Source of the DNA: Mytilus edulis | Lineage: Eukaryota | Direction of reading: 5' to 3' | Length of the DNA: 64,000 nucleotides | Assembly (NCBI RefSeq): GCF_963676685.1 | Contig: NC_092354.1 | Span: 64,790,001-64,854,000 of the forward strand | Shown here: positions 8,825 through 43,462 of the stretch, piece by piece | Numbering within the stretch: the stretch's first letter is position 1 | How the letters are laid out: each line of letters opens with the position of its first letter | Position numbers and translations under genes: made by a program | The notes under the pieces: generated by a model | What the model saw: the letters and a program-made list of their open reading frames with translations, nothing else | What the model was told of the DNA's origin: nothing | Database searches by the model: none

Positions 8825-10343
8825 TAATATTCTTAACAATATCGTACTGCACACTCGGGAAAAACTTTATCCAAACATGAAATGATTAAAACTGCAGGCA
8901 GTTGCATTATTAATGCAGGAAAAATTAGATAACATAACTTGAAAAGTGTTTTTTTTTTAGCAAGACTTACCTTAATCTTAAAGATCTACTAACTATGTTA
9001 ATAACAGCCAGTCTGTTTGTTTATTAAATTAAAGGTGTACAAAACATATTTGTAATTATATTCTGTCCTTTTGTCGTTAGTCAGCTCTTTTGTATGTTAC
9101 ATATTATTGTTTTTAAATTGAAAATTTTAATGAGAATCTAAAAAATCAAAGAACTCATTGCTTTCAAATTAAATATCTTAATAAGATTCAAATAAGCATC
9201 TGTATCAAACCGATATGTTATTTTTGAATATTTTATTAGTCATGTCATGTCGCTATTTGTACTACCTGCCATGTTTGTTTTGTTTGTAGTTAGAATTTGA
9301 AATCAATGAGTATAATTTTCGTCTTATTTTACTGTCTTTAGAACACTCTGTCAAAAGTCATTTTAAAGTCATCAATTTAGCGGAATATGTTACAAATCAT
9401 ATTTGAATGCTTGAAAGGGTGAAAACTATACTCCTGGGAACTTATTTTGTTTTGAAACGTTAGTATTCAAATAAAATCTTAATTTACCTATCTTATTCAG
9501 TTCAGCAATTTTATGTTTTTTAAATGTCAGTTTAATCAAAGAAATTGATACAAAGTTAAATTTTAGTAGTTCTACATTTTTGCACTTGTATTAGAAAAAC
9601 ATATAGTACGAAAATAATTAAGTAGTAAGAAAATTTATATATAGTATCAAAAAAAGATGTGGTATGATTGGCAATGAGAAAACACTTTGCAAGACCAATT
9701 GATACATAAATTAACAATTTAAGTTGATCGTAAGGCATTCAGCAATTAGTATAGCAAAGCTTACACGACATAGTCGGCTATAAAAGGCCCCGGATAAAAC
9801 GTAAAACAATTCAAACGAGAAAATAATGTACAAAATTAACGAAAACCAAATATGTAACACAGCAACAAACGACAACCTATGACGTAAAGGCTCTTCATAT
9901 TAAACATGCACATACATGTACATACATAATGTTATACAAAGCTACAAAAAATATTACAGTTTATCCCATTTTTTGATATTTTGAAAATTCACATATTGTA
10001 CATATTACAACGTTTGTGAATGGTGATTTCTTTTGTGAAGAAACATATTTATCAAATTGTTTACATTTTCATTTTTTTGATAATTCAACACCATAAACAA
10101 ATTGATCTATACTAATACATGTAATATTCTGCAGTAAAACAAAACTCTTTCACACGAAATTAACATAATTAATTCCCTTGATATGACTTTATTTAGTTTA
10201 TGGGTTTGTAAATGTGGTTATTTACTTTTATCAGTGAATTATACAATATATTGAGCTTCTTCTCGTTTTGTTACTTACATTGTGTTCAATTTACATGTTT
10301 CTGTATCATTATGTTAGAATAAATGTTAAATCATTTCACATTA

Positions 10344-10400
10344 TATGGTAATATATTTGCTGGTATCTAAATGTGTATTCGTAATGTATACATATATATA
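10344..10400 (+). promoter_or_regulatory. Candidate type-3 Pol III promoter (PSE-like element + TATA) of ncRNA copy 1
   Basis: TATGGTAATATA...TGG at about -80 to -60 and TATATATA at -31 to -24; equivalent elements at near-identical spacing precede all five copies. Confidence 0.65.
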
Positions 10401-10423
10401 CATATCGAAAGCATGATTCTATT

Positions 10424-10686
10424 GGAGATTGAAAGAACTGTGTCTACAGAGCGGTTTCTTGGATGTGTTGGTGTTTAACATACACTACGATACACGATCA
10501 TACACATGTGTACTGAGATTGAAAGGCGACAAGGCACTTTCATTATTAAGCAGAGACATACATGCGAATGTCTCCGATCAAAGGTACATTACAACTACAA
10601 GCAGATGTATGCTACAGTTATATGACAGCGAATGCATAAAGCTTTGCAAGGTCGTACTGAGACACGGTGATTTCAAATCTTCTTTT
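10424..10686 (+). ncRNA. Candidate Pol III panhandle ncRNA, copy 1 (~263 nt)
   Basis: 5' GGAGATTGAAAGAACTGTGTCT pairs with 3' AGACACGGTGATTTCAAATCTTC, followed by TTTT; TATA at 10393-10400; internal hairpins such as TGAAAG/CTTTCA and GAGACAT/ATGTCTC; no internal T4. Confidence 0.72.
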
Positions 10687-12819
10687 ATTTCTGTAAAAAA
10701 TAAACGTTATTAAATTTAAACTTATGTATATAGTTCTATACATTTCACGATGCAGTTATATGACATTCTTATACAATACTAGTTGATCCTTTATGTAGTT
10801 ACTGTTGTTTTGTATAATAAAGAGGCATTCGCTTCCAACTTATGCTCAAAGATATTTTAAAACTCTATTTCTCCGTCCAAACATGTTTCGAAACGATAGT
10901 TTATGTTATACACTACATGTACGTTAACGGATACTATTTCTGTTTACTTATTTTATATGTGAATTGTCATTGCGGAAATGAAAACACACATTACTATTTT
11001 CGATTGTAAGATGTTATAATAAGTACTACAACTGTTCTATATATGGATTGATACGTATCATTAGAGATGACAAGGATATTGTACAATGATTAACGAACTG
11101 ACGTATGCGTAATTTGACGAATTGTACAAAACGGGAGCTGCTGTTTTGTACAAAGAAATGAATAAATCTAACATGCATACGCTGGTTGAAGTTTAGTCAT
11201 TCGCATCACTTGCATGTAGTTTAAAGAAGATAGTATCTGTTTATAACTACTCACATAAATTATTCAATGTTTTCCACTACAGCGAATGATGCACTCGATA
11301 TCCGAGACTTTTCTTTTGAAAATATATGCATAATAAATAAAATAACAAAAATACCGAACTCCAAGGAAATTTCTAAACGAAAAATCAGCAGGCAAAGGAC
11401 AAAAAATCCAAAGCTCAAGCACATCAAACAAATGAATAACAACTGTTATATTCCTGACTGGTTACCGGATTTTTATAGTAAGAAAATGGTGGATTAAATC
11501 TGGTTTTATAACTAGCTATACCTCTCACTTATATAACAGCAATTTAAAAATCCATTTTATTGACATCGATGTATGAACAAAAACAAACAGACAGAAACAC
11601 CTAAATTTCTCTTAGTTAATCTGAAGAACAGTAGTTCTCGTTTGTTTATGTAATTTATACGTGTTTCTCGTTTCTCGTTTTTTATATAGATCAGACCGTT
11701 GGTTTTCCCGTTTGAATGCTTTACACTAGTAATTTTGGGACCCTTTATAGCTTGTTGTTCGGTGTGAGCCAAGGCTGCGTGTTGAAGGTCGTACTTTGAT
11801 CTTTAATGATTTGCTTTTATAAATTGTTATTTGGATGGAGAGATGTCTCATTGGGACTCGCACCACATCTTCCTATATCTATGATAGTTAAAAATATCAA
11901 AATTATAAGATTGATGATCAACACATATATAACTCAACAAAATTGTGAACACTTCAGAAATTAAGAATAATCTAAGATTTGTAATTATGATTAGTTCATT
12001 TTGTTTTAGGAGTAGGAAACACCTAAATTTCTCTGAGTTATTATGAGTTTCTACCTTGAGGAAGGCAAATAAATTCAAAGGACATGAAATTCGCAACCCC
12101 AACCATTCCCAATCATCGAAATGTCATAATGATCAATCATAGTATTTGCTTTTCGAGTATTTTGGAAAATCAATGCTATTGTAAATACATGTACATTTTG
12201 TATTCATTATTTTAGATTTTTTAAAAACAAACCATGTCTTACAGATTTTACTCAAACCTATGTAAGTAGTGGCGATACATAGACTAAGTGGTATACACAT
12301 AGAAAATTCAATATTCTAATACATTATGATGATTGAAAAAATAATTATAAAAAGGAAAAAAGGCGGGTCTACCCCATGTGTTTTTTTTTTTAAATGCTTG
12401 TTTTTTCTTCAAAATAGTAGAACGTCTTTATGCAAAACCAATTATGCATTTTGTCTAGTAAACTTCAATAACAAAATGATTTATTTACTCTTATGACCAC
12501 CAACATAGTTGCGAAGGTTAGAGGTTGACAGTTATGATAAAGAACTATTTGCAACATAAATCATTTCTTATTTGAAAAAAAAACACCTGTACATTTTCTT
12601 TTATTTTAATTTTAAACGGAGATATTTGTTTGTCTGAATCCTAAATACGTAAATGAAAACACAGAGCAAGCATACGATACGACAAGAATAAAGTTATAAA
12701 TTATTTAAGCATTCATAATTGATTGAACACATTCATCGATGCACTCAAATAGTGATGCACATTTCATTTTAAATCAATAATTGCCAACAACCATATTCTA
12801 TCGTAAAAAAAAGAAACAC

Positions 12820-13115
12820 GGCCCAGTAGTCAGCACTTCGGTGTTGACATGAATATCAATTATATGGTCGTATTATAAATTTTCTGTTTATAAAACTTTG
12901 AATTTTTCGAAAAACTAAGGTATTTTCTTACCCCAGGAGTAGATTATCTTAGCCGTATTTGGCACAACTTTTTGGAATTTTGGGTCCTCAATGCTCTTCA
13001 ACTTTGCATTTGTTTGGCTTTTTAACTATTTTGATCTGAGCGTTACTGATGAGTCTTATGTAGACGAAACGCGCGTCTGGCGTATAAAATTATAATCCTG
13101 GTACTTTTGATAACT
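12820..13115 (+). mobile_element. Retrozyme/Penelope-associated repeat carrying a hammerhead ribozyme
   Basis: ~300-bp unit containing the hammerhead core at 13040-13083; boundaries approximate. Confidence 0.65.
13040..13083 (+). ncRNA. Type I minimal hammerhead ribozyme
   Basis: GCGTTA-CTGATGA-GTCT(TATGT)AGAC-GAAAC-GCGC-GTC-TGGCGT: stem I GCGUUA/UGGCGU, intact CUGAUGA and GAAA cores, stem II, palindromic short stem III, GUC cleavage triplet ending at 13077. Confidence 0.85.
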
Positions 13116-15462
13116 ACTTGAAACTTTTTAAAAGTCTTATTTTATGCTCTCCACTCAGTTACACCCTTTAACACATTTATTGTTGTATAGATATCTATTG
13201 TTCTATTATTGTCCATGCCAATCAGGGAAATAAATACAATACAATACAGTTGTTACCTGAAAGAGAGGGAGCATCTCAAGGATTTCCCAAATTCAATATA
13301 CTTTTACACCTTCTGCAGAAACAGAAAATTAATGCCCATATAAATCCAAATGATATTTTGTCTTATTGAAACACAATATGCATTCAACTTTTATGGATGC
13401 CATGCCTTAAAAACTTTTAAACTGCACAAGTTAGTATGTACATAGTAGATTTTGAGGCGTTAATAAGCATTTGTTTTGATGAACCTACAATTCGTTCGTT
13501 AATATCGTGGTAATCTCTACTATCAGAAAGCTTTATTTGAAATGAACTGTATTGATTGACATGAACAATAGAGAAACTATACATACCTGACAATAATTGG
13601 TGATTTAAACAGTGTCATTTAGCGTAACATATATAGTGAAACTCAACTGAAAATTTAATCATCTTCTGCAGAACCAAAGTGCAGAGTAAAAACCCAAATA
13701 CTCCGGTGAACTACGTCTGTTTTGATCACTATTATCCGAGTAAAAATTTTGAATTTCTACAATGTACTGTCTTCGCTAATTATCTTATTAACGTGTTATT
13801 ATTGATCTTTGATTTCTTGTTGTAAATTGTTGCTTTTTTCCCGTTGTGTCCATTTGACGTGGCTCTGTACAGTCAGGATTCTAATCCGTCAAAATTATCT
13901 CCCCATTACGCCAGTTAATTTTCACAATTGTAGAAATTGAAGCCATTATAGGGATGACGCGCTGCCAATTTTTGTCTTCAAAACCGATAAATTTATCCAC
14001 ATAGCATCATACGATCCTTATATGTCAATTGTATTTTAAAAGATAAATGTATCTACTAGCTAATGAGCATCAGTTAATGATCATGTCTGCATTGATTCAA
14101 CTTATAACTATTGACTGATCGGTTGTCAGGTGGAATTTTCGAAAATTCTTAAACATTTAAAAAAAATTCTTTTAATTTATTAAATATTTCGTGGAAGGGC
14201 AGACTAGATATTTTCAGTGGCTGAAGATTACTAATTCTAGTTATCACACCAAAAATTATATTTTTTCGAAGATATGCATTTTATCTTATGTGATAAAAGT
14301 AAGAGGTTTAGCTAGTTATACAACCCTGTTCAATCCACAATTTTCTACATAAGAAAATACCGGAACCGAGTAAGGAATATGGCAGTTGTTTTCCCGTCCA
14401 TTTAAGGTTTTTTTTTTTTTTTATTTTGCCATTTGATGAGAGACTTTCCGTTTGGATTGTTTTCCGGAGTCCGCTAAAAATTGGACCACTAATAATATGT
14501 TAATGGAATCATTAAATAGCTGTGTTGCTATCATGAGTTCATTGTTCAAAGCATTGACATTCATGTGTTTATTTATTTATTCTATTAACTCAATATTCAG
14601 CCTAGGATAACATGGATAACACGAATTTGACCATCAATATTTCTGTAATCCTTTAGACTCACTTTCATCATTCGAACGACATGCATCGATTGTTATTAAG
14701 TAAATCCCTATCTTATTATTATTTTCACTTTCAAACCAATGGTTATATCATACGTGTTTCACATATTATTAATCAAATCTGTCATCTATCCATACATATC
14801 AATTCAATCGTATTTTGAATCCATAAAAACGTTAAAATCATATTTAGGCCTTTTAAACTTTTATATCCCTCTCCTGTGTCATTGTTAATGTCAATTTGTT
14901 ACAACAACCAAAATGTTCCATCCACTAATAAATTTCACTTGTATTAGAAATACCGATAGTACGAAGATAATTAATTGTTAATTAGCTACAATAAAATATA
15001 ACAGTGTATCCCTATATTACTTAATATTTGGACTCTGTTTGTAAAGATCAAATTGTATATATATATATAACAAGAAATGTTATAAAGATTTGTTTTACAT
15101 AAAATGTATAATATTTAAACAAAAATCAGTAAATCAACACCATTAAATAACTTTTATGTGCTAACATTCAGTAGCAAAAGAACTCTTACAAAATAAATTA
15201 ACAGAATTATATCCCTTGATGTGATCTAATTTAGTATATGGGTTTGTAAATATAGTTCTTTACTTTTATCAGTGAATTATACAATATAATTAGCTTCTTC
15301 TCGTTTCGTTTCTTATACATTGTTTAATTCACACGTTTCTCTATTATCATATTAGGATAGATGTAAAATCTGTATACATTATATGGTAATATATATCCTG
15401 GTTTCTATTTTTGTATTCGTAATGTATATCTATAAATACCTTTTCCAACGATAGTTTCAAAT

Positions 15463-15701
15463 GGAGATTGAAAGAACCGTGTCTGTAGGTTGGTTACTTA
15501 GATGTTTTGGTGTTGAACCAATGTTATATACACCATGATACACAAAGTGTACTTAACAAGAAAGGGTTGACCTATGATGCAACTTTCTTACGTACATTGC
15601 AGCTTTGCGGTTGTGCAGCCGTATGAAACAGTTTAAAAAAGAGCGAATACCCAAAAAAATCGCTTGTTCAACTGAGACACGGTGGTTTCAGATCTTCTTT
15701 T
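15463..15701 (+). ncRNA. Candidate Pol III panhandle ncRNA, copy 2 (~239 nt)
   Basis: GGAGATTGAAAGAACCGTGTCT ... AGACACGGTGGTTTCAGATCTTC then T8; TATAAATA at 15431-15438; upstream TATGGTAATATA; internal hairpins AAGAAAGGGTTG/CAACTTTCTT and AGCGA/TCGCT; one internal T4. Confidence 0.72.
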
Positions 15702-16087
15702 TTTTATTTTCTCGAAAAATAAACGTTATATAATTTTAACTAATTTATAGTTCTATACATATGATACATATACCCATATAGTTTTTATAAAATTCTTATG
15801 CACGACTAGTTGATCCTTCATGATGGTAATATTGTTTTATATAATAAAAAGGCATTCGCATCCAACTTATGCCCACCCATTTTGTTTCAAACTTTATTTC
15901 TCCGTCCATACATGTTTCGACACAATAATATCTTCAATATATTACACTACGTTGACAGATATAATTTCTGTTTACTTATGTTTTATTTGTATGTCATTGC
16001 GGAAACACACTACTGTTTTCGATTGTGAGATGTAATAAGTACTACAACTGTTCTAGATATGGATTTATATGTATCAATAGAGATATA

Positions 16088-16209
16088 CAGAATAATAGGT
16101 AGTTTCGTTTTTGATTCTGACTATATAATGTGGAATATCTAGACGAGGGCGAGTTAAGATATTCCACATGATATAGTCAGTATCAAAAATGAAACTACCT
16201 ATTATTCTG
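16088..16209. mobile_element. Palindromic fold-back element inserted in the 3' flank of ncRNA copy 2
   Basis: ~50-bp near-perfect arms CAGAATAATAGGTAGTTTC...GAAACTACCTATTATTCTG; absent from the homologous flank of copy 1 (~11060). Confidence 0.8.
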
Positions 16210-18300
16210 TTTCTCGGTAATTATGACGTCACACAATGTATTGCCTAATATTTTCAGTGATACAGCCAGTACGTTGATACTCGAAAATATTAGGCAGTAA
16301 GAGCAAAGGAAAAATATACGAAGTACCGATTAAACAAGGATATTGTGCGATGACGAGCGAACTAAATAAAGCGTAATTATACGAATTGTACGAAACGGGA
16401 GCCGCTGTTTTGAACATAGTAATGAATAAATCAGACATAAAAACGTTGATTGCTTCTATACATATAATTTCCGTTTACTTATTTTTTTATATGTATGTCA
16501 TTGCGGAAACACGTATTACTATTTTCGATTGTGAGATGTAATAAGTACTACAAGTGTTCTAGATTTAGATTAATATGTACAATTAGAGATGACAAAGATA
16601 TTGACTGGTTCTAACCTGTTCGGTGTGAGCCAAGGCTCCGTGTTGAAGACCGTACCTTGACCTTTAATGGTTTACTTTTGTGAACTGTGATTTGGATGGA
16701 GAGTTGTCTCATTGGCAATCTTCCTATATCTATCTACTGACAATAATTTGTGGTCTAAACTGTGTCATTAAGCGGAACATATCAAATAAAACTTAACTGT
16801 TTGATAATTTAATCATCTTTTGCAGAGCCGAAAAAAAGTACAGAGCAAAATCCCAAATGCTCCTGGGTACTACGTTTGTTATGAGTACTAGTACATGAGT
16901 AAAATCTTAGGTCACCTACAATGTATCTAATTAAGCTGCGCAATTTTAAATGTATGTTTAATCAAAGATATTACAACAAAGACAAATTTATTTTATGAAG
17001 TCATTTAGTTCTGTGTTGACAACACGAGTTTATTGTTATTTGTCAAGTAAAGTAAAGCATTTACATTTATGCATTTATTTATTTATTTTATTTTACTAAT
17101 TATTATGCCGAAGATAACATGGATTTGAGTTTCAATATTTTCTGTAGACTCTTGTCTATCATTCGAACGACATGCATCGATTGTAATTAAGTTTATCCCT
17201 ATTTCGTTTGTATGTTCGTATGTTCGTTTCTATAATATCTCTTAAGCCAGACTAGACTGAGTGGTCCGTAAGATTTGCAAGCGCTGCTGGACACAATATG
17301 ATCATGTAAAAGGAGAAGGTTCACGAAGGGTTAAAATTGGCCCTAAATTTTTTATGTTTTTTAAATCGGGCCAAAAAACTACAATTTCACATAGAAATAC
17401 TTGTGATAATATTAATAAGACAAAAATATATTTTCATGGCACCTTCCTTTAAAATTTATGGAGCTATGACCCCTTAATTAAATATTATTTGTATATTAGG
17501 TCAATTTTAGTAATTTTTTTCCATAACTTTAATTGTTTTTTTGGCATAATTAAACTTGGCCGCCATCCACGATCCAAAAAGTATTTATATTGATGAATTC
17601 TATATCAAAAATGGAATTTTTTGGTTACAAAACATTTTGGATCATAGGTGGCGGCCAAGGTTTTTCCTACAGCTTTTAGGTCTGAAAATTGCACAAAATC
17701 ATCATATTTTGACAAAATGTTCAAAATGGGCATACTTTGGAGAATAGTATGTACTTTTATGAAAACAACTGATTTATTAAGCATTAACGATGAAGGCTTT
17801 TGAAATAGACCCATTTACAAACCAAATAGTGACCTTTTTGGTTTTATGAAAAAGTTGATATTTTAGATAATTTTTGTCATGAGTGACCATTGTCCTTTAC
17901 TTATTTCGCTTTTATCCTTTCAAATTTGTATTCCTTACAGTTAGAAATCTTCCAAATTAACTATTTATATTATTGAATGGTGTCACTCAATTTATATTTA
18001 GCTAGAAAAAAATATTACAGTTTATCCCGATATTTCCTAATATTTGGACTCTGTAAAATTCATATTGTATATACAACAAAAAATGTCTTTTTGCGAAGAA
18101 ATTAATTTTTTCAATAACTAACACCATAAATAAACTGATATATGCTAACATTCAGTTGTAAAAAAAACTCTTACAAAACAAATTAACAGAATTATCTCCC
18201 CATATGTGATTTAAGTTAGTATATGGGTTTGTAACTGTAGTTATTTTCTTTTATCAGTGAATTATACAATATATTGAGCTTCTTCTCGTTTTGTTGCTTA

Positions 18301-18655
18301 CACAGTATGCATTTCATGCATTTCTACACAGTATGCATTTCATGCATTTCTACGCAGTATGCATTTCATGCATTTCTACACAGTATGCATTTCATGCATT
18401 TCTACACAGTATGCATTTCATGCATTTCTACACAGTATGCATTTCATGCATTTCTACACCGTATGCATTTCATGCATTTCTACACCGTATGCATTTCATG
18501 AATTTCTACACCGTATGCATTTCATGCATTTCTACACCGTATGCATTTCATGCATTTCTACACAGTATGCATTTCATGCATTTCTACACGGTATGCATTT
18601 TATGCATTTCTACACAGTATGCATTTCATGCATTTCTACACAGTATGCATTTCAC
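18301..18655. repeat. 26-bp minisatellite, ~13-14 copies
   Basis: Unit CACAGTATGCATTTCATGCATTTCTA. Confidence 0.95.
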
Positions 18656-18781
18656 ACTATTATCATGATAGAATAACTGAAAAATCGTCAAAGTTACGTT
18701 GTATGGTAATATAACTCTAGATTTCTATATTTGTATTCGTAATGTATACCTATATATACATCTCCAACAGTTGAAAGAATC

Positions 18782-18984
18782 GGAGATTGAAAGAACTGTG
18801 TCTAAGCATATAAGCAGGTCTTTGCAGAACGTTGCTCTTAACAAGATAACTGGCGGGACGAATGTAAAAATATGACTATTTGATAAAAATGATTGATACG
18901 CAAATGCGACTGTTTTAAGTAGCGTCGGCATGCAGTGATCGCGCATTCATAAACTGATACACGGTGATATCAGATCTTCTTTTT
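18782..18984 (+). ncRNA. Candidate Pol III panhandle ncRNA, copy 3 (~203 nt)
   Basis: GGAGATTGAAAGAACTGTGTCT ... ATACACGGTGATATCAGATCTTC then T5; TATATATA at 18751-18758; upstream TATGGTAATATA; one internal T4. Confidence 0.68.
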
Positions 18985-20359
18985 CTTCGAATAATAAACG
19001 TAATTACAATAAATGTACAGTTCTTGATATAACACCATTTACTTTTTAGAAGTTCTACAAAAATTAATTTGCTATACTAAATGTTATAACTCATGTTTGT
19101 ATATTAAGACAAATAAAGTCCTATCGATTTAAGATCTTGATCTTTAAACTTAATAAGCTTGCACGTTCTGAAATTTTTAGTCATATTAGAATCTCACAGT
19201 CTTTAGATCTTCTCATGCCCATGTCAGACCTATCAAACGTTTGTTATTGGAGTGAATTAAAATCCTACATGTGTGTATCAAGTAATTTCTTAATTTTTTT
19301 GTATACATCTATATATTTATCCTTTTTTTATTATTATTGGAGACTCATGGTTGTAATAACAATTATAGCAGTTTTATTTCTTAATATCTAAGATACATTC
19401 AGTGCCAAATTAATGTCCCTCAAATTTTATTGCACTCTCTTAACTTCACCGGCGAAACATGTTTCGACTCTACAGTATCTTTATATTGTAATGTGAATCA
19501 TAAACCGATAAAACATATGTTTAACTATTTGTATGATAATGGCTATAAATTAAATACATAATGTTCATTACTGTTTTAGATTGTGAGATAAAATATTCTA
19601 CCACGTTTTCGATTAATGGATAAGTATAAACGCACGGTAACAATATTGATTGATGAGCACAAAAAGGTTACATTCGTGTCCTCATAAAGCTTTAATAAAA
19701 ATATAATGCAGTTACCTCAACACTAGGAACTATATTCGTGTACAACGAAAATCGATAATTGTGGTCTCGGACATCTTATATGGATTGTTTTTCTTTTGAA
19801 AGTATCATAATTGGAAAAAGTAAAACCCCAATTAGCAACAACGCACAGTAACTATCAATTTAATCACATCGTCGTCTCTCTTTTAAGTACATTATTAACT
19901 TTAACAGGAAAAACAATGACCTAACAAATGTAATCATTTTATGCCTTGAAGGCAATTTCCTTGAAACCTCAGTTTCGTTCGAGTTGATTCTTCAAAAGAA
20001 AAACATATCGTTCTGAGTGAAAAAATAAGCGTATAGATATATAAGATTAAAAGAAAATAGAATTCTGACAAATGTTTTCGATGTTTTTGATAGATTCTAG
20101 TCGTCTGATTTGTAATTTTACTGATTGTGTCCTGATTTCGACTGTTGACATTCGTCGTACATGTAGTTTGGAATTGCATAGCTATTGATGCATTCATAGC
20201 ACGATACGCTTTTAACATGTAGATGCACTCGTTTTCGATCCAGATAACGTTTGTTTACTTGATTTGAATTTCTTTATATACCAGATTTGATCACCAGTAA
20301 ACTAGTGTTCTCTGAATCCCCCTACAATTGAGACAATGATAATGTATTCATGAAATCAT

Positions 20360-20531
20360 NNNNNNNNNNNNNNNNNNNNNNNNNNNNNNNNNNNNNNNNN
20401 NNNNNNNNNNNNNNNNNNNNNNNNNNNNNNNNNNNNNNNNNNNNNNNNNNNNNNNNNNNNNNNNNNNNNNNNNNNNNNNNNNNNNNNNNNNNNNNNNNNN
20501 NNNNNNNNNNNNNNNNNNNNNNNNNNNNNNN
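20360..20531. other. Assembly gap (172 N)
   Basis: Run of n characters. Confidence 1.
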
Positions 20532-22328
20532 AAAGAGGCGGAAGAAGAAGAAGCTACAGAGCTCATGTTTACGTTGTTGAATCATACATTTCATGTTCGA
20601 CCGTATATTTTCTGACTTATGCAAATAGAGTTAATATAGTTGATCATAGTTATACAAGCAAATATAGTTATACAAGCAAAGCTGAGTTGATATTTAAAAA
20701 AAAGACCTTAACATATGATCTGTTAGTCTGTATAGGTTTCAGATAGCTCACTAAAGCTCGTGGACAGGACAATTAGTTTACCAACAAGTCAACTTAGAGC
20801 AAATAAGGGAATTATGTGCACTTTTAACACAATTATCAAATTACTTTATAAACTCACGAAGCAGCAGACAGAGCATGGTACACAATATCCTCTTTACTTT
20901 GAAGTGCGATAATGTTATTGTATATATACATGTAGTGTTTTAATATTTTGATTGTATCATCATCTAACACGGATATGTAAACATTGAGGATACCTTTGTA
21001 TTTTACTATCACATTTATTTTACATGTCAGCACGAACTATGGGCTTCCCCACGTCTATTTTTAGAAACAAAACAAATATGCGGTATTTAAGTTACTGTTA
21101 AGGACTTTTACAAACAAACACGCATATTATCCAGATGGGAGACTCAATGAATTTTAAATTTATTTCAAATACTCTAGATCTATTTCCTTCTATTAAAAGG
21201 AACATTTAGCATTCTTATCTATATACAGAGCTGAATCTTTTTAATTCTAGTCGGAATTAATCAACTATGCATCTATATACACCCATTACTTAAAGTAATA
21301 CCATGGAATTTTACTCTAGCACCTAGTTCTTTTAGGTCACTAAATATATTCGACGTAAAACCATTCAAGTTTGAACTTTCCAAAAAGCGGCACATACTGC
21401 TTAGCTGTATCCGAATTTTAAGTACTAATTGGAATGCATGTGATTGCCGATTTAGTACAGGAAGTGTGGAACTTTCTATATATATTGATTGATATAATTT
21501 TTTTTTTAATTGTACGTTATACTAACTATTCTGGTACCCGGCACCATAAAGATATTCTCCATCATGAGCTATAAATAACTGCATGTACAGGTATCAATGA
21601 ATCATTCACTCAATTAATCAAACCAGTAGTTATATTCATATCACACAATAAAATCAGCCATCCAGTCATATCAATTCATTAGTTCGTTGAAATTATTAGA
21701 AACTTAATTCAATATTAACGCCTTTTACACTTGATTCATGTATCTTTTATTGTTACTTTATATTTCCCTTTGCATTTGTTTGCCAGTAAAAAAGGTTTTC
21801 CCAACACGATTCAACTAATTGTTTTCAAAATACCTATAATAAGAAGATAATTTATCAGCAAAAAAAGATTTTAATAAAAATACGTTACAGTTTAAAACAC
21901 AATTTCCAAATATTTAGAATCTGTTTGTAAAATTCATATTGTATAAGAAAAAATATATGTGACTTGAGATTGCTTTTGTGAATGAAAAATATATATCAAA
22001 TTGATTAAACTTTCAATTTTTCAATAACTCATCACCACAGGTAAACAAACTCTTTATAAAAAGTTAACAGAATTACTTCCCCTGAAATGCATTAATTTTG
22101 ACTATTGGTTTTTCATCGGAGTAATCTACTTAAATCAATGGATTATTCGATTCATTGAGCTCCTTCTCGTTTTGTTGCTTAAACAGTGCACAAGTTACAC
22201 GTTTATTTTTTATCAGGATAGTATAAATGTAAATTCGATATATAATATATGGTAATATACTCCCTGGCTTTCAATATTTCTATTCGTTATGTATACCTAT
22301 ATATACGGTTCCAACGCTGAAATTAAGT

Positions 22329-22513
22329 GGAGATCGAAGGAACTGTGGCTAAAAAGTTCACCGATTATTAAGGTTGTTGATATGGTCATGAACATGTTGC
22401 AACATGCGGTAACATCTCAGGTAATGTGCAATCTGAGTGTATAGTTATTGCGGGCATAGGCTATTGCACTATTGCTTGAATAATCAGCCACGGTAATTTC
22501 AAATCTTCTTTTT
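22329..22513 (+). ncRNA. Candidate Pol III panhandle ncRNA, copy 4 (~185 nt)
   Basis: GGAGATCGAAGGAACTGTGGCT ... AGCCACGGTAATTTCAAATCTTC then T5; compensatory U-A to G-C change; TATATATA at 22298-22305; second stem GATTATTAAG/CTTGAATAATC enclosing three hairpins; no internal T4. Confidence 0.75.
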
Positions 22514-22933
22514 CATCAGAGAATGTTATATTAACAAATATAAAGTCATCATGTGTCATGGCCACGGGAAATTAGATTCCCATGATACAAGAAGATAGGA
22601 GAAAAACAAATTGTAAATCAAGACGAAGTTCTTTAATATGTTTTTATCTAAACCATTTTTACTGTTTATCTGCATTTACCGCTTATGAAACGATTTTCAG
22701 ATTTATAGTGGTTTAAGTTTTTATGCCAACCAGTAGCAAACAATGCCATTTTTTCTGTTATACTACAAAACATTACACTTGGTACCAAAAGTATTTCCGG
22801 ATATCGTCTTGTAGTATTTTGTAATGTAGAGGTGTTATAAATATAAAGTAAATAATAACAAAAATGATATGATGTCCATATTAATGCGTTACCGGCTACC
22901 AAATTGACGAAGTTAACCCTCCAAATTAATTTA

Positions 22934-23380
22934 TCAAATAAGTCTGATCAAGTTGGTATAAGGGCGTCCGTAAATTTCACGAAGGGATGATTTCAACTTC
23001 ACCATTTGGAACTCTTGGTTTAAAAGCGTCCTTGTAAGCAGCAACCCTCTATCAAGAAAATCATGATAGGAAATACAAGCACGGGAACCTAGTATCAATT
23101 GGGAGGTATATATCTCGTATGCAGGTGCTGCTGGAATGGTGCTACTTAGAAATGGAAAGTTCACAATTGGAAAGCTGAAGTTATCTCTTTTGTCGTAAAG
23201 AATAGTTTTCAACCGACCTTCATGGTCAATTTCTAGATGTAAGTCAAGATATGATGCCGACTTAACTGTATCTGTTGTATTTATCTCTAGTTCCATGGGA
23301 TAGATGCGTTCAACATAGTCACCAAATTTAGAATTATTTAGTGAGAGAAAATCATCTTTTTAGCAGAAAGTAAAGTTAAT
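22934..23380 (-). mobile_element. Degenerate reverse-transcriptase fragment, Penelope-like retroelement
   Basis: TTDTVKSASYLDLHLEID..GRLKTILYDKRDNFSFPIVNFPFLSS.IPAAPAY resembles the RT thumb/C-terminal region of Penelope-like elements; truncated. Confidence 0.75.
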
Positions 23381-23539
23381 GGATATTGCAATAAACGCTG
23401 AAAAACAATGAAAAAATATATGTAAGACATGATCAACATATAAGTCAAATTGCTGGAATTGCCGGTTGACTCCGTGTAGGAGCTACCGCCATTAAATGAC
23501 GTTTTTTTTCTTTTCTTTTTTTCAATAACTTAAAAATAT

Positions 23540-24515
23540 AAAAAAGAAGATGTGGTATGATTGCCAATGAGACAACTATCCACAAAAGACCAAAATGACA
23601 CAGACATTAACAACTATAGGTCACCGTACGGTTTCAACCATGAGCAAAGCCCATACCGCATAGTCAGCTATAAAAGGCCCCGATAAGACAAAGTAAAACA
23701 ATTCAAACGAGAAAACTAACGGCCTTATTTATGTAAAAAAATGAACGAAAAACAAATGTGTAACACATAAACAAACGAAAACCACTGAATATACAGGCTC
23801 CTGACTTGGGACAGGCACATACATAAATAATGTGGCGGGGTTAAACATGTTAGCGGGATCCCAACCCCCTCTAACCTGGGACAGTGGTATAACAGTACAA
23901 CATAAGAACGAACTATAAAAATCAGTTGAAAAAGGTTTAACTCATCAGATGGACAAAAATATAAGTGGACGTGGCCTGGTACTTATACATCCCGACACAA
24001 AAAGACACAATGAACAGATCTAAGAGTACTCGCAGTTATCTGACAGCTAATTCAAAGCCACTAACAACTAATAAAAAATCATGCATCTAAGACTAAACTA
24101 TCAATCCGTACACATCCAACATCCAATGGATTTAGTGTAAAGACATCATGAACAGCCAGAGAACAACATGACCTTGTGCAATGCCAAGTTACAGGTATCG
24201 ACAGATTGTAGATCCATGAATATGTATATATATAACATACTAGTAAAATTTAGTTAGCTTTTAATCTGCTGATAACAAAATCAATATTTATTCCAATAAA
24301 AACAATATTCAATGATCTTATTACGGTGTTGAATAGGCAACCTTTTAGAATAAGTTTTTTTAAAGGAGCGACAAGTTTACATGGATCATTTCTAAATTTC
24401 CGGGCACGGTTAACAACATTTCCGTAAAAATGAGGTTGTTCTATCCCGTTTGAAATAAGTTTTCTACAGGTACATCCAAACTTCAAAACCAAATCTTTAT
24501 ATCTATGGAAAAAGT
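23540..24515 (-). mobile_element. 5'-truncated retroelement: C-terminal ORF fragment (24250-24510) plus downstream non-coding region equal to the abundant dispersed repeat
   Basis: ORF end KLISNGIEQPHFYGNVVNRARKF..LKKLILKG..IRSL is contiguous with the longest copy of the dispersed repeat. Confidence 0.6.
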
Positions 24516-24983
24516 TTATTTTTGTATAGTTACAAGCCTCTAAATAATATATTGTTTTGACAAAATTCTAGAAATGTTTTCGTCAATATGAATTAGTGAT
24601 ACTCGAGTACTCGCTCGGCAAAACATCTATAAAATGGTGACACAAAAGTAAACCCATTTTAAGTATTGTATGCTGTTTTCTTATTGACTGAAAACCCTCA
24701 ACATTTTTTATTAGGAGTAAAGTATAGTCCAAGGCGACGACTTTATGCAGAAAGCCGAATTTCTATTGAGTGGTCCCGCAGTTCATGTCGCTGCAATCTG
24801 AATTTTTTTTTTCAATACCGATTGCGGGAAGACGTTAATTCAGTAGTATTATGTTTGTTAAGATTGTAATTAGATAACGGATTCTAATTTCAAAAGTCTA
24901 TGTACAATTGTTTCACAGTAAAACGAAGTCATTCATTTTGTAAACATTTTTTTTTTACGAAAACAACGCAACAAAACAAACAC

Positions 24984-25494
24984 CATCTTCGCTAGCCAAG
25001 GGTTACGATCCACTTCCCTCCTCTCCACCCTTGGCAGATTAAGCCAACATTTGTGATAACAACTGTTGCGCCATCTATTGGTAAATTAAAGTCACGCACA
25101 TTCCGAATATATTATTCTTGACCAATGGTAGCACCTGAACTCTTCAATTTGGAAGTAAAAACACGGTAGCGTCTAAATTCTACACGCTTTGTAAAGCAAG
25201 AAACGAAATTGTACGTTGAAATTCATGCATTTATGCAAGAAACATACATATAAACTTTAACTAGTCGATTATAAACATTCAAATTCTCACTAAATATAGT
25301 CGTATGTTTAGGGATGTAAAGACTTAATAATAAGCACGTGGCAATTGTTTACATACACTTTCTATATTTATACGTGATCATGTTATAGGCGCTTTTTGAT
25401 TGGATACAGCGAGTTTCGACTGTAACCAATGAAAATCATTACCTTGAGTCTCCGAACTTCTATCTCAATCCGCCAAGGGTGGATAGCGAAGATG
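24984..25494. mobile_element. MITE-like element (~510 bp)
   Basis: Inverted termini CATCTTCGCTAGCCA ... TGGATAGCGAAGATG. Confidence 0.65.
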
Positions 25495-25845
25495 CAGAAA
25501 ATCTTAAATGCAACAAAAACAAACAACAATGCAACACATATAGGAACGAACTACAAAATAAATACTGCCATACTCTTCACCTGGTACAGGACATTTCACG
25601 AAAAAATTGTCGGCTGAACCTAGTTTAGTAGCTAGCAGAGTCTTGCGCTTTATGACAATGTTAAATATACCGCTAAATGACAACATGACATTGCAGGATT
25701 ACAGTACATATAAATGCAAGAACACTCAGAGCAGAGAAATACATAAATATATAATATAATTGTATATCATAAGCCAATGAGGAATTTAAGATATCTTGTG
25801 TACAAAAATGTGTATCGATTTAATTTCTTTCAACTTTTTAGTTAA

Positions 25846-26245
25846 GGATGTACTTAAGTGAGGTTAGGTTAAAATTAAGAAATTAAGAAATTAAAATTGA
25901 TACTATAAGCTGGTAGAGCATCAATCAAAGATAAAGATAAGCTAAAAATATTGATAGGTAATGGACCTTTTTTTTGAGATATTTGAAATTTAAATATGGC
26001 GGGAAAAGGCTGACTCGGACTTTTACCTTATAATTGCATTGGTAATATTTAGGTCTCAAAACAAAAGAAAGAAAATCAAGAATATTTTAAAACTTTGGTA
26101 AATGACCTTTCATGAGCTATTAGGTCTTATATGAACAAAATAAATGAGTGTTATGGGGCTAAATATTTTACATTGTATTGTATGGAAAAACACCAAGGAG
26201 TCCGAACATTTGACACAAATTCCAAAACCTCGCATAAGTACATCC
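25846..26245. mobile_element. MITE with TTAA target-site duplication (Kolobok-like)
   Basis: TTAA|GGATGTACTTA ... TAAGTACATCC|TTAA. Confidence 0.85.
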
Positions 26246-26970
26246 TTAAGTCAAAATCATAAATAAAAGATTATAATTATAAAAGTCAACGCACGATTGT
26301 TTTATAGTTAAACTAAATCATTCAAGTATAGAAACATGAGCATTGTGTTCATTTTGAAGTGTCATATGACGTTATGGGAACTAAGATTACAAAATATATA
26401 TTACTAGATAGCATTTTATAATGTTTAATAGCATATATAGGATAACTGACATCTGTTGGGAAAAACCTTAATAATGTTAAAAAAAATGGTGGCTGAGTTT
26501 GTTATAGCAACTCTATTATCAAAAGAATGTATCTACAACTATGCTATTGGTGTTGCTTTAGGACATTCAATTGCATATCCCGTCATGATGAGGAAATTGT
26601 TATTTCGTATGTACAAAACGTATCGAATAAGTATCATTTAACTGTTTAGTTAGTTCAATATCATATAAATACTTCATATGTTATTTGAATTGTAAACAAA
26701 AGAATAAAATAATTGGTTATCGCCCTTAATGAGTTTTAACTTAATTTAATTTCTTGTTAGACGAAACGTTTACTTTTATAACTAAATGGTATGATAAAGG
26801 TTGATTCTTGTCTTTCTTAAAACTTGTTTACAATCGTACATTGTTGTGATCTTTTAGTTAAGATAAAATATTTGAAAGATCTTCTCCGTAGTATGGTAAT
26901 ATAATGCCATGGCTTGTTGATTTCATTTATAGTATACACCTATATATAGTTTTCAAAATAAACTACTTGT

Positions 26971-27269
26971 GGAGATTTAAATCAACATGTCTATGGTCTC
27001 TTACATGTTATACAAGTATACTGGTGTGTCCGCGATAATAAGTATCCAAGTCTTTGTTTCGAGATTGGGTCTGATTCTGAGATGAGTCAAATGTGGTTTA
27101 AAAGTATGACATATAGATCATGAGGCGCAATGCCACCCTCCTGTGGGTCGATATGTTAAATACATAAAGCAATTATCGTGATCCAGTACTGTTAATGTTG
27201 ATTTTAAACGGTGCATCTAGCGGGAGGACTGAATGTTACCGAGACCTGTTGATTTCACATCTTCGTTTT
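26971..27269 (+). ncRNA. Candidate Pol III panhandle ncRNA, copy 5 (~299 nt, most divergent)
   Basis: GGAGATTTAAATCAACATGTCT ... AGACCTGTTGATTTCACATCTTC then GTTTT; AAAUCAACA/UGUUGAUUU is fully paired despite sequence change; TATATATA at 26941-26948; upstream TATGGTAATATA; internal stems TACTGG/CCAGTA and CGCGATAAT/ATTATCGTG. Confidence 0.68.
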
Positions 27270-28145
27270 GTCGAAAGTAACATACTTTCAACTCTCATGG
27301 TCAGTTCTACACGCAATATTATTTCAATTTAACTAATATGCAATGATTATGCTGTTTATATTTAAAGCAATAAACTCTTTAAGTCGCCGTGTATACATAG
27401 TACATTATGAAGTGTGAAACTGTTGTATTTATGATAAGTTTATATGAATTGGTGAATAACAATGTCCTTATTTTTCTAAATATATTTTCACAAATTTGAT
27501 AGATATAACAGAAAAACTTTTGCAAAATTTGCATCCTGTTTTCGGGCATTTTATTTAGCATTTAAGCTTTCGTATGGTAACAAATACGTGACAGAATTGC
27601 CAGTCTAACAATGAAGCTGTAATACTGAGGACTCCAGGGATATACAAAAATTATCTGCGTCATAGATTAAGGTCAAATTCATGTAAGAGATTATTTTACT
27701 ACAAGTAAAAATCATTAAATGATATGACCAAAGGAAACCAATTAAAGATACCAGGCTTTGACCAAAAACCAAATACGGTTTTATCGACATTTCCAATATA
27801 CTGGTGGTGTTAAGGTAACATTTAATTCACCCAGGTAACAATACAGAGAAACTGTGGTGGTGCTATATGAATGCTTAAACAAAAAACATGATATCTTTTA
27901 AATCTACATGAACTATCCCATAGAGGTCGAATTAGTCACTAGCAAGTAAATAACGATGTTTCTTAGCTGATTTTGACAAAATTGAACTAAACTGGATGCT
28001 GCAAGTGAATTGTCATTTCAATTTTTCACTTTCATTAATGATTAAACATAACAAAAATCATTTTTGTCATATATCTTATAACTAGTAATTTTACCAATAA
28101 AGACATATTATCAATGCAACGTCACTAATTAATATAAAGATTTAA

Positions 28146-42430: not shown

Positions 42431-43462
42431 ATAAACTCTATATGATCATATGCGGTACATCTTTAATATCATTGTATATAATGCATATTAAGTTAAACAA
42501 TAATAAAATTATTTTTTGCTCAATGTAAAAAAGATAGAAGATACCAAGTGAGGAAATCCTTTTCAATAGACACAATGACCAAATTAATGAAAAAATGACA
42601 CACAACATTAACTAAACGTTTCACGAAAAAATTAAGTATAAATAACATAAACCAGAATACAACTAATTTAATGATGATATGTTGTATACTACCCAGCTTT
42701 CAATACAGTTTACTAATTATAGATACATGTACGTATTATCGTAAAAAAGTCTTATTGTGGTTGCCATCCCTTAACGTTAATCCTACAGCTCTTGTATTGC
42801 TCCTTTTCGTCTATGTCCATCAGAGAGGGTAAAAGACTTAATTGAGACAATATATGTCTGAAAACTCTGTTATTAGATACAGGAAGATATGGTGTGAGTG
42901 CCAATGAGACAACTCTCCATCCAAATAACAATTTATAAAAGTAAACCATTATAGGTCAATGTACGGTCTTCAACACGAGATCCTTGGCTCACCCCTAACA
43001 ACAAGCTATAAAGGGCCCCAAAATTACAAGTGTAAAACCATTCAAACGAGAAAACCAACGGTCTAATCTATATAAAAAATACGAGAAACGAAAAACACGT
43101 ATAAATTACATAAACAAACGACAACTACTGTACATCAGATTCCTGACTTAGGACAGGTGCAAACATTTGCAGCTGGATTTAACGTTTGAATGGTACCAAA
43201 CCTTTTCCCTTTTTCAGAAACAATAGCATTACATCACAAAATAGAAAAACACACGATAAAATATCATTTGCCAGGCTTAATTGTATATTATAGTTTAATT
43301 ATAAAAATTACATTCCTCTAACAAACATTGATATAAATCAAAAGATATGAGGGGTACATAAAAAAATGCATCAAATCATCATAATTTGTTTATTGGTAAT
43401 TACTATATGTACGTATAAAATGTTTAACGATAATCTCTAGGGTCTAGAAACGTAAGTTCAGT

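What the first reader, a model, noticed from the sequence alone, without database searches (positions are those of the whole stretch)
10344..27269. Tandem array of five unrecognised Pol III-type panhandle ncRNA genes with a conserved closing stem and hypervariable interiors
Seen: five same-strand units 3.3-5 kb apart, starting at 10424, 15463, 18782, 22329 and 26971. Each has TATGGTAATATA at about -80, a TATA box at -30 to -32, a GGAGAT start and an ATCTTC end followed by a T-run. The first ~22 nt are complementary to the last ~23 nt, and the interiors differ in length (total 263, 239, 203, 185, 299 nt) with no shared ORF. Established: an upstream PSE plus TATA and a T-run define type-3 Pol III genes (U6, 7SK, Y RNA); Y RNA, nematode sbRNA and vault RNA genes occur as tandem clusters of panhandle RNAs with variable loops. 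These copies lack the Ro60 site (GGUCCGA/UUGACC), convincing internal A/B boxes and the 7SK GAUC stem, and are 2-3 times longer than Y RNAs; four copies do carry a GUG/CAC pair in the upper stem like Y/sbRNAs. Inference: a possibly undescribed family in which a common protein-binding handle presents exchangeable structured modules (scaffold, decoy or guide).
Basis: partly seen in the sequence, partly recalled or inferred. Interest (0 to 1): 0.93.

Follow-up and report, generated by a model that had tools for sequence, protein, structure and literature searches.

The report
Mussel cluster of Y-like panhandle RNAs
Five neighbouring genes in a mussel genome carry the same promoter layout as the animal's own U6 gene. 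Each makes a 185-300-base RNA in which only a 20-22-pair closing stem is conserved, so this looks like an undescribed relative in kind of Y RNAs whose partner protein and function are not known.

Summary
Five same-strand units (RNA starts 10424, 15463, 18782, 22329, 26971) each have:
- an invariant TATGGTAATATA box at -79 to -81;
- a TATA box at -30 to -32;
- a GGAGAT start and an ATCTTC end followed by a T-run.

The box-to-TATA spacing equals that of this genome's own U6 and RNase MRP genes. The 5' and 3' ends form a 20-22-pair bulged stem with three compensatory double changes.

A small random-primed RNA library holds a 238-base contig identical to 10424-10661, beginning exactly at the predicted start. 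It also holds a 207-base contig inside unit 2. Unique spacer DNA has zero depth.

No Rfam family matches, even at E 10. 7SK, RNase P, RNase MRP and U6 lie elsewhere. The family has only these five copies in 1.37 Gb, so it is not a mobile element.

What is not supported is "exchangeable structured modules". Four of five interiors fold no better than shuffled sequence, share no motif, match nothing else in the genome, and diverge faster than their flanks.

The best reading is a lineage-restricted, Y-RNA-like type-3 Pol III family in which the stem is the selected part. It fails the tests for membership of Y RNA or vault RNA. The genome carries at least 10 intronless Ro60 paralogs and no detectable canonical Y RNA. 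This suggests a partner but does not show one.

The parts
10344..10355 (+). u1 upstream promoter box TATGGTAATATA (-80)
   Evidence: invariant in all five units
10393..10401 (+). u1 TATA box TATATATAC (-31)
10424..10686 (+). u1 RNA, 263 nt: 5' arm 10424-10445, 3' arm 10660-10682, T4 10683-10686
   Evidence: An RNA-library contig is identical to 10424-10661 and starts at the predicted +1
15382..15393 (+). u2 upstream promoter box (-81)
15431..15438 (+). u2 TATA box TATAAATA (-32)
15463..15705 (+). u2 RNA, about 239-243 nt; ATCTTC ends at 15697, T8 at 15698-15705
   Evidence: RNA-library contig 15479-15685 with 1 difference
18702..18713 (+). u3 upstream promoter box (-80)
18751..18758 (+). u3 TATA box (-31)
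18782..18984 (+). u3 RNA, 203 nt; ATCTTC 18974-18979, T5 18980-18984
20360..20531 (.). assembly gap in the u3-u4 spacer; not part of any unit
22248..22259 (+). u4 upstream promoter box (-81)
22298..22305 (+). u4 TATA box (-31)
22329..22513 (+). u4 RNA, 185 nt; compensatory GTGGCT/AGCCAC in the stem; T5 22509-22513
26892..26903 (+). u5 upstream promoter box (-79)
26941..26948 (+). u5 TATA box (-30)
26971..27269 (+). u5 RNA, 299 nt; most diverged stem, with AAATCAACA/TGTTGATTT keeping the pairing; ATCTTC 27259-27264, G, T4 27266-27269

Best explanation

**How each unit works**
- A box at about -80 (TATGGTAATATA, a variant of this genome's U6/MRP box TATGCAAATATC) and a TATA box at about -31 set the start at the G of GGAGAU.
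- The T-run after AUCUUC ends the transcript.
- The RNA closes on itself. Nucleotides 1-22 pair with the last 23 nt before the U-tail. The order is a 7-bp invariant basal helix, a one-base bulge on the 3' strand, 4 bp, a 2x2 G.A/A.G loop, then a 9-bp upper helix that carries GUG/CAC in four copies.

**What is selected**
- Selection acts on the promoter, this stem and the U-tail.
- The 130-250-nt interior is a fast-evolving, largely unconstrained loop.

**Inferred mechanism, by analogy with Y RNAs**
- The stem plus the 3' oligo-U is a protein-binding and export handle. Candidate binders are La on the U-tail, an exportin-5-type minihelix receptor, and a stem-specific protein.
- The likeliest stem-specific partner is one of the genome's many Ro60-type TROVE proteins.
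- The RNA would therefore act as the RNA subunit of a small RNP.

**Shown:** gene anatomy, promoter likeness to U6/MRP, stem covariation, presence of the RNA, single-locus family.
**Inferred:** Pol III itself, the exact 3' end, every protein partner, and the function.
For: **Promoter**
- U6 has TATGCAAATATC at -79 and TATATATAG at -30. MRP has the same box at -83 and TATA at -35.
- The units have their box at -79 to -81 and TATA at -30 to -32, with the same 36-37-nt gap.
- The box, TATA, GGAGAT and ATCTTC are invariant in all five copies, although the flanks have diverged to about 68-80% identity.

**Termination signature**
- The units hold no T5+ run and 2.6 T4+ runs per kb. The surrounding DNA has 3.4 and 12.5 per kb.
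- A5+ runs are equally frequent in both.

**Stem**
- All five MFE folds close the same stem.
- 87% of cells are paired against 30-49% in slid controls, with three double compensatory changes.
- RNAalifold finds this stem and nothing else.

**RNA evidence**
- Run X2 is a random-primed metatranscriptome of 47 million letters. It holds a 238-nt contig equal to 10424-10661 with 0 differences and a 207-nt contig equal to 15479-15685 with 1 difference.
- Depth is 0 over the unique spacers 10808-11179, 11924-12667, 13226-13783 and 14528-15457.
- Four RNA or probable-RNA runs from three studies hold 5-6% of the sampled words of 10300-19100. That is about the share the three RNAs make up.

**Family size:** only five copies in 1.37 Gb.

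**Loose interior**
- u1/u2 interiors are 71% identical in aligned positions (54% counting gaps), against 80-83% for the flanks; Fisher p = 0.003.
- Other interior pairs show no detectable homology, although the upstream flanks of u1/u4 and u2/u4 score z = 32-36.
- Interior folding z-scores are -0.9, +0.5, +0.5, -2.4 and -0.4. No motif is shared.

**Y-like context**
- The genome has at least 10 intronless Ro60 paralogs with TROVE and vWA_Ro60 domains, E = 1e-133 to solved Ro60 structures.
- No Y_RNA match at E <= 1.
- The Y RNA review PMC4726728 describes clustered Pol III genes, conserved lower and upper stems, a greatly varying loop, GUG-CAC in the upper stem, and a lower stem resembling an exportin-5 minihelix.
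Against: - No canonical Ro60 site. GGUCCGA is absent, there is no bulged C on the 5' strand, and the only bulge is one variable base on the 3' strand.
- The RNAs are 2-3 times longer than Y RNAs.
- Rfam Y_RNA does not match them, even at E 10.
- Three raw-read runs gave 0 reads on u1/u2: two RNA-seq runs and one miRNA-seq run, with about 10-13 million records read from each. These libraries probably exclude such RNAs by poly(A) or size selection, but that was not checked.
- The RNA evidence rests on assembled contigs of one laid run. Contigs cannot show strand or true ends.
- Interior T4 runs occur in u2, u3 and u5, and the terminators of u1 and u5 are only T4. T4 is therefore read through at least sometimes.
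- The Y_RNA genome scan scored only 51 of about 200,000 first-look candidates, so canonical Y RNAs may exist elsewhere.
- Nothing links the Ro60 paralogs (contig C7) to this array (C11).
- Distribution outside this genome and its close relatives could not be examined.
Confidence: 0.6

Rival explanations
1. They are the mussel's vault RNAs. These are Pol III panhandle RNAs carried in vault particles and bound through the TROVE protein TEP1.
For: - Vault RNA genes of vertebrates are also small tandem clusters of Pol III genes with paired ends and variable middles (my own knowledge).
- Major vault protein is abundant in Mytilus gill (PMC5302490).
- I found no paper describing a mollusc vault RNA.
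- A multi-exon TROVE gene on C4, which could be TEP1 or the ancestral Ro60, exists.
Against: - No internal box A or box B.
- No match to Rfam Vault, even at E 10.
- Lengths of 185-299 nt, against about 90-140 nt.
- The promoter is purely external, as in Y RNA genes.
- The identity of the C4 gene was not resolved.
Confidence: 0.12
2. The interiors are the functional part. They would be rapidly diversifying bait, decoy or guide modules under positive selection, for example in a conflict with viruses or mobile elements. The stem would only present them.
For: - The interior diverges faster than the neighbouring untranscribed DNA.
- Each copy keeps a long interior rather than losing it.
- GC content is 38-40% inside the units, against about 32% in the window.
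- u4's interior is more stable than shuffles, z = -2.4.
Against: - No interior matches anything else in the genome at E <= 10, so there is no long antisense target.
- Four of five interiors are not more stable than shuffles.
- No motif is shared.
- Transcription-associated mutation of a heavily transcribed, unconstrained stretch would give the same pattern without selection.
Confidence: 0.15
3. They are precursors of small RNAs. The 22-bp terminal stem with a 3' overhang would be cut by Dicer, like adenovirus VA RNA or vault-derived small RNAs.
For: The stem length and the 3' U overhang fit an exportin-5/Dicer substrate. This is an inference from anatomy.
Against: A size-fractionated miRNA-seq run (X14, about 10 million records read) gave 0 reads on u1 and u2. 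It did give reads on the neighbouring repeat.
Confidence: 0.04
4. They are expressed but functionless leftovers, a young mobile or SINE-source element, or a diverged copy of a known RNA such as 7SK, RNase P, RNase MRP or U6atac.
For: - The interiors are unconstrained.
- The family is known from one locus of one genome only.
Against: - The promoter box, TATA, start and end are invariant in five copies whose flanks are 20-30% diverged, and the stem shows compensatory changes.
- Only five copies exist, with no dispersed copies.
- 7SK (2 copies), RNase MRP, RNase P (2 copies) and a U6 array are found elsewhere with good scores.
- No Rfam hit.
Confidence: 0.07

Closest known systems
Y RNAs (Rfam RF00019) and nematode stem-bulge RNAs
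   Same: - External type-3 Pol III promoter.
- Several genes clustered at one locus.
- 5' and 3' ends pair into a lower and an upper stem, separated by bulges or a loop.
- The stems are conserved while the loop varies greatly.
- GUG/CAC in the upper stem (4 of 5 copies).
- 3' oligo-U.
- A basal helix of 7 bp followed by a bulge.
   Different: - 185-299 nt instead of 100 +/- 20.
- No GGUCCGA/UUGAC Ro60 site and no bulged C.
- The bulge is one variable base on the 3' strand.
- The Rfam model does not match.
- Ro60 binding is untested.
Vault RNAs (Rfam RF00006)
   Same: Small tandem cluster, Pol III, paired ends, variable middle, length differing between paralogs.
   Different: No internal box A or box B, no Rfam match, twice the length, purely upstream promoter.
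U6 and RNase MRP genes of the same genome
   Same: Box at about -80, TATA at about -30, identical 36-37-nt gap, 9 of 12 box positions identical, T-run terminator.
   Different: The RNA products are unrelated. The box variant TATGGTAATATA is private to this array.
Adenovirus VA RNA and EBV EBER RNAs
   Same: Pol III RNAs of 160-170 nt closed by a terminal stem with a 3' overhang, which serves as an exportin-5 minihelix and binds La (my own knowledge).
   Different: Those are viral, use internal promoters and have conserved central domains. Here the interior is not conserved.

Membership tests
Type-3 (U6-like) Pol III genes | Upstream proximal element plus a TATA box at about -30, at fixed spacing, with no internal promoter needed | tested here: met
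   Same geometry as this genome's U6 and MRP genes. No box A or box B
Type-3 (U6-like) Pol III genes | Termination at a T-run, and avoidance of long T-runs inside the transcript | tested here: met
   T4-T8 follows ATCTTC in all five units. No T5+ run inside, against 3.4 per kb outside; A-runs are not depleted. Interior T4 occurs in three units
Type-3 (U6-like) Pol III genes | Transcription depends on Pol III/SNAPc/Brf2 | not testable with these tools
   Needs ChIP or inhibitor experiments
Y RNA (RF00019) | Match to the family covariance model | tested here: not met
   No hit at gathering score or at E <= 10
Y RNA (RF00019) | Ro60 site in the lower stem: 7-bp helix, single bulged C, 3-nt bulge on the opposite strand, conserved sequence (PMC4726728) | tested here: not met
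   A 7-bp basal helix is present, but GGTCCGA is absent and the only bulge is one variable base on the 3' strand
Y RNA (RF00019) | Size 100 +/- 20 nt | tested here: not met
   185-299 nt
Y RNA (RF00019) | Conserved stems formed by the 5' and 3' ends, a variable loop, and GUG-CAC in the upper stem | tested here: met
   GUG/CAC is present in u1-u4 but not u5
Y RNA (RF00019) | Bound by Ro60 | not testable with these tools
   At least 10 Ro60 paralogs exist in the genome. Binding is unknown
Vault RNA (RF00006) | Internal box A and box B; match to the family model; about 90-140 nt | tested here: not met
   No box A or box B; no Rfam hit; 185-299 nt
Vault RNA (RF00006) | Presence in vault particles or binding to TEP1 | not testable with these tools
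   MVP is abundant in Mytilus gill. No RNA data from vaults
7SK / RNase P / RNase MRP / U6 | Match to the family model | tested here: not met
   No hit in the window. The true genes are elsewhere: U6 on C10, 7SK on C9, MRP on C3, RNase P on C6
MITE / SINE | Many dispersed copies | tested here: not met
   Only the five tandem copies by BLAST, exact pattern and profile search of the 1.37-Gb assembly. Interiors are unique

The most novel reading that the evidence does not exclude
This would be a new class of Pol III RNP RNA in bivalves, in which a conserved bulged terminal stem is the docking site for members of a greatly expanded, intronless Ro60 (TROVE) family. The long interior would be driven to diverge faster than neutral DNA. 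That would make it an RNA-protein surveillance or decoy system evolving under conflict, and it would stand in for the canonical Y RNAs that this genome seems to lack.
Probability: 0.15. Interest if true: 0.85.

Novelty: new variant of a known kind. Interest (0 to 1): 0.6.

Why it matters
Outside vertebrates and nematodes, the small Pol III RNAs that partner Ro60, La and vaults are almost unknown. I found no mollusc Y or vault RNA in Rfam or in the paper library.

This array gives a concrete, expressed candidate with a clear handle, the stem, that can be used as bait for its protein. It sits in a genome that also shows an unusual expansion of Ro60 genes.

It is also a clean natural case of an RNA gene whose promoter and closing stem are held fixed while its body changes faster than the neighbouring DNA. 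That bears on how much of a Pol III RNA needs to be conserved, and on transcription-associated mutation.

The defined mussel U6/MRP-type promoter (box at -80, TATA at -30) is of practical use for expressing guide RNAs in bivalves.

Tried and rejected
**Known families**
- Rfam on the whole window at gathering score, and on 10300-27400 at E <= 10: nothing on any unit.
- Telomerase-RNA idea: no telomere-template permutation in any unit.
- Box A/B, Ro site, hammerhead core, C/D boxes: none meaningful.

**Interiors as copies of, or antisense to, other genomic sequence**
- u1 whole and the interiors of u3, u4 and u5 match only themselves.
- Shared interior motif: none.
- Interior thermodynamic stability: not above shuffles in four of five units.

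**More family members**
- Exact promoter pattern and a promoter plus 5'-arm profile R1 found only the five.
- The next hits (23 bits and below, E >= 0.06) include a dispersed repeat. Its 40-nt AT-rich likeness to the promoter is weak (z = 3.6) and I take it for chance.

**Relatives elsewhere**
- A pattern scan of JGI metagenome contigs gave three chance hits in AT-rich microbes.
- No tool here reaches other mollusc genomes.

**Reads**
- Raw-read runs X17 and X18 (RNA-seq) and X14 (miRNA-seq) gave no reads on u1 or u2. I treat the RNA-seq blanks as uninformative because library selection is unknown. I treat the miRNA-seq blank as weak evidence against a small-RNA precursor role.

**Other**
- Canonical Y RNA in the genome: none at E <= 1, but the scan scored few candidates.
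- TROVE gene on C4: the fetched 10 kb shows short exons only, so it could be TEP1 or Ro60; one translation attempt failed on stops.
- Literature searches for mollusc or Mytilus vault RNA, Y RNA, Ro60/TROVE, U6 promoter and Pol III ncRNA found nothing relevant.
- A structural covariance model of the whole RNA was not built, because the model would be too long for calibration. The stem was tested by pair counts instead.

Full report
**1. Is it there?**

Yes.
- TATGGTAATATA occurs five times in the window, only on the + strand, at 10344, 15382, 18702, 22248 and 26892.
- Each box is followed 37-38 nt later by TATA(T/A)ATA. About 22-24 nt after that comes GGAGAT.
- Measured from that G, the box lies at -79 to -81 and the TATA box at -30 to -32.
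- Each unit ends ATCTTC followed by T4 to T8. In u5 a G stands between ATCTTC and T4.
- Across the whole 1.37-Gb assembly, the box plus TATA at this spacing is found at these five places plus four hits that look like chance. The reversed-pattern control gave three.

The assembly gap at 20360-20531 lies in the spacer between u3 and u4. It is 1.4 kb past u3's terminator and 1.7 kb before u4's box. Its flanks hold no piece of a unit. Continuity across it is unknown, so the u3-u4 distance is only an estimate and a hidden unit cannot be excluded. I made no attempt to fill it.

**2. The stem**

- Minimum-energy folds of all five RNAs close the same 5'/3' panhandle.
- RNAalifold on the alignment of the five RNAs (A3) predicts that stem and nothing else. 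Its order is 7 bp (GGAGAUU with AAUCUUC), a one-base bulge on the 3' strand whose identity varies (A/G/G/A/C), 4 bp, a 2x2 G.A/A.G internal loop, then 9 bp.
- In the 22-pair version, 87% of cells are standard pairs, against 30-49% when the 3' partner is slid by 1-3 columns.
- Three pairs show changes on both sides that keep the pairing. In u4, GUGGCU/AGCCAC replaces GUGUCU/AGACAC. In u5, two pairs change together (C-G to A-U and G-C to A-U), and the G.A/A.G loop becomes U-A and C-G pairs.
- With five sequences the statistics are modest: 13-34 of 500 column shuffles reach the observed values. Direction and register are nevertheless clear.

**3. The promoter is this animal's U6/MRP type**

I located the genome's own Pol III genes with Rfam models:

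| Gene | Location |
|---|---|
| U6 | tandem array, 733-bp period, C10 |
| 7SK | two genes, C9 |
| RNase MRP | C3 |
| RNase P | two genes, C6 |

Promoter positions compare as follows:

| Gene | Box | Box position | TATA position |
|---|---|---|---|
| U6 | TATGCAAATATC | -79 | -30 |
| RNase MRP | TATGCAAATATC | -83 | -35 |
| Units u1-u5 | TATGGTAATATA | -79 to -81 | -30 to -32 |

- The units share 9 of 12 box positions with U6/MRP and have the same 36-37-nt gap to the TATA box.
- 7SK and one RNase P gene carry a related box 8-9 bp further upstream.
- The array is none of U6, 7SK, RNase P or RNase MRP.

A second Pol III mark is the T-run count. The 1,166 nt of transcript hold no run of five or more T and 2.6 T4+ runs per kb. 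The surrounding DNA has 3.4 and 12.5 per kb. A5+ runs are as frequent inside as outside. Interior T4 runs do occur in u2, u3 and u5, so T4 is not a tight stop here.

**4. Is it made as RNA?**

- The run index listed four RNA or probable-RNA runs from three studies that hold 5-6% of the sampled words of 10300-19100. That is about the share the three RNAs occupy.
- I laid one of them, X2, on 10250-15800 together with three raw-read runs. X2 is a random-primed metatranscriptome of an invertebrate gut, only 47 million letters.
- X2 holds a 238-nt contig identical to 10424-10661. It begins exactly at the predicted first G.
- X2 also holds a 207-nt contig equal to 15479-15685, with one difference.
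- Depth is zero over the unique spacers 10808-11179, 11924-12667, 13226-13783 and 14528-15457.
- A data set of 47 Mb cannot assemble single-copy DNA of a 1.37-Gb genome. These contigs must therefore come from abundant RNA, and their extent fits the predicted transcripts.

Limits of this evidence:
- Contigs give neither strand nor true ends.
- Both contigs stop 12-25 nt short of the 3' end.
- Two ordinary RNA-seq runs and one miRNA-seq run gave no read on u1/u2. The first two are probably poly(A)-selected, which I did not check. The miRNA-seq blank argues weakly against processing into small RNAs.

**5. What it is not**

- Rfam finds nothing on the units at gathering score or at E <= 10.
- There is no telomere template, box A/B, Ro site, or shared ORF.
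- It is not a mobile element. BLAST with u1, the exact promoter pattern, and a profile of promoter plus 5' arm (R1) find only the five copies. They score 75-98 bits, and the next hit scores 23 bits.
- The low-scoring hits include a dispersed repeat with a 40-nt AT-rich likeness to the promoter, which I take for chance.
- A pattern scan of metagenome contigs gave only chance hits.

**6. The interiors**

- The interiors of u3, u4, u5 and the whole of u1 match nothing else in the genome at E <= 10. They are therefore not captured or exchanged pieces, and they have no long antisense target.
- No k-mer motif is shared by all five.
- Against dinucleotide shuffles, the interiors alone have folding z-scores of -0.9, +0.5, +0.5, -2.4 and -0.4. 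The full RNAs score -4.7, -3.1, -0.6, -4.8 and -1.9. The excess stability therefore comes from the stem.

The striking fact is the rate of change.
- u1 and u2 share about 950 bp of homology. Within it, the untranscribed flanks are 80-83% identical in aligned positions and the arms 88-94%. The interior is only 71%, or 54% counting gaps; Fisher p = 0.003.
- The upstream flanks of u1/u4 and u2/u4 are plainly homologous (local-alignment z = 32-36), yet their interiors show no detectable similarity (z about 0.1-0.2).
- The body of the gene thus changes faster than the neighbouring DNA, while the promoter box, TATA, start, stem and end stay fixed.
- Fast divergence is enough to explain this. Module swapping is not needed.
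- Whether the cause is transcription-associated mutation of an unconstrained stretch or positive selection cannot be told from one genome.

**7. How it most likely works**

*Shown:* five paralogous genes with a U6/MRP-type external promoter; RNAs present in total RNA; a covarying bulged terminal stem with a 3' U-run; a single-locus family.

*Inferred:* Pol III starts at the G of GGAGAU and stops in the T-run. The stem plus U-tail is the functional part, a handle for La (U-tail), for an exportin-5-type receptor (a minihelix with a 3' overhang) and for a stem-specific protein.

The nearest known design is the Y RNA. According to PMC4726728, Y RNAs have the following properties:
- Their genes are clustered and transcribed by Pol III.
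- Their lower and upper stems are conserved.
- Their loop "varies greatly".
- The Ro60 site begins with a 7-bp helix followed by a bulge.
- The upper stem carries GUG-CAC.
- The lower stem resembles an exportin-5 minihelix.

The mussel RNAs share that layout, including GUG/CAC in four of five copies.

They fail the tested membership features:
- The sequence of the Ro60 site is absent.
- The bulged C is absent.
- The size does not fit.
- The Rfam model does not match.

I therefore say they work like Y RNAs, not that they are Y RNAs.

A lead rather than evidence:
- The genome has at least 10 intronless, full-length Ro60 paralogs on C7. They have TROVE plus Ro60-type vWA domains, with E = 1e-133 to solved Ro60 structures.
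- There is a further multi-exon TROVE gene on C4.
- A limited scan found no canonical Y RNA.

Vault RNA is the main rival. Major vault protein is abundant in Mytilus gill (PMC5302490), and I found no paper on a mollusc vault RNA. Against it, there is no internal box A/B, no match to the Vault model, and the length is double.

**8. Novelty and score**

I found no description of this family in Rfam 15 or in the paper library. The kind is known: clustered type-3 Pol III stem-loop RNAs with a conserved stem and a variable loop. This family is new within it, with unusual length and an unusually fast-changing body. I rate it a new variant of a known kind, interest 0.6.

That the organism is a mussel comes from the scan's earlier notes, which I did not verify. 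Hits fell on contigs C1 to C14, but contig sizes were not listed.

Noticed in passing
window 12668-13225 (hammerhead match 13040-13083, + strand): A repeat between u1 and u2 carries a type I hammerhead match (30.2 bits, E = 5e-4, below the gathering score of 34). It is heavily covered in all four RNA runs. Many reads join 13116 back to 12821, about 296 nt head-to-tail, which fits a tandem or circular RNA. Small-RNA reads are also present. It fits the mussel hammerhead retroelement noted elsewhere in this scan.
   Followed up: partly
window 11552-11923: A second well-expressed dispersed repeat. Copies also lie at 16617-16733 and 42874-43141 of the window. Reads carry many differences, so they come from other copies.
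   Followed up: no
G000 C7: 12.28, 12.285, 12.289, 12.32, 21.60, 26.96, 27.02, 31.80, 31.81 Mb (L058-L061): At least 10 intronless, open 490-585-aa Ro60 paralogs (TROVE plus vWA_Ro60). Ro60 is usually a single intron-bearing gene in animals (my own knowledge). No canonical Y RNA was detected.
   Followed up: partly
G000 C10:45057210-45092312 (L006-L015): The U6 snRNA genes form a tandem array with a 733-bp period. At least 48 copies are identical by score, each with its own box and TATA promoter.
   Followed up: partly
L025, L026, L027, L030 and the U6 loci: Two spacing classes among this genome's type-3 promoters. The box-to-TATA gap is 36-37 nt in U6, MRP and the five units, and 45-46 nt in both 7SK genes and one RNase P gene. 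The second RNase P copy (L031) has no clear box.
   Followed up: partly
window 18299-18654: A 26-bp tandem repeat of 13.7 copies at 96% identity, lying directly upstream of u3's promoter region.
   Followed up: no
window 60042-63855: About 3.8 kb of satellite-like tandem repeat at roughly 80% identity between copies, with several registers.
   Followed up: no
window 35042-37363 (-), 43463-44956 (-), 6534-7793 (-): Long uninterrupted ORFs of 773, 497 and 419 aa with no Pfam domain at E <= 0.001. The ORF at 49627-50532 (-) has weak RING/Sina-like zinc-finger matches.
   Followed up: partly
L037, L038, L044, L045 (G000 C1, C3, C11): A dispersed repeat family containing TATTTG(A/T)ATTCGTGAT ... 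GGAGATTGAAA, faintly like the units' region from -55 to +11 (23 bits, z = 3.6). Probably chance.
   Followed up: partly
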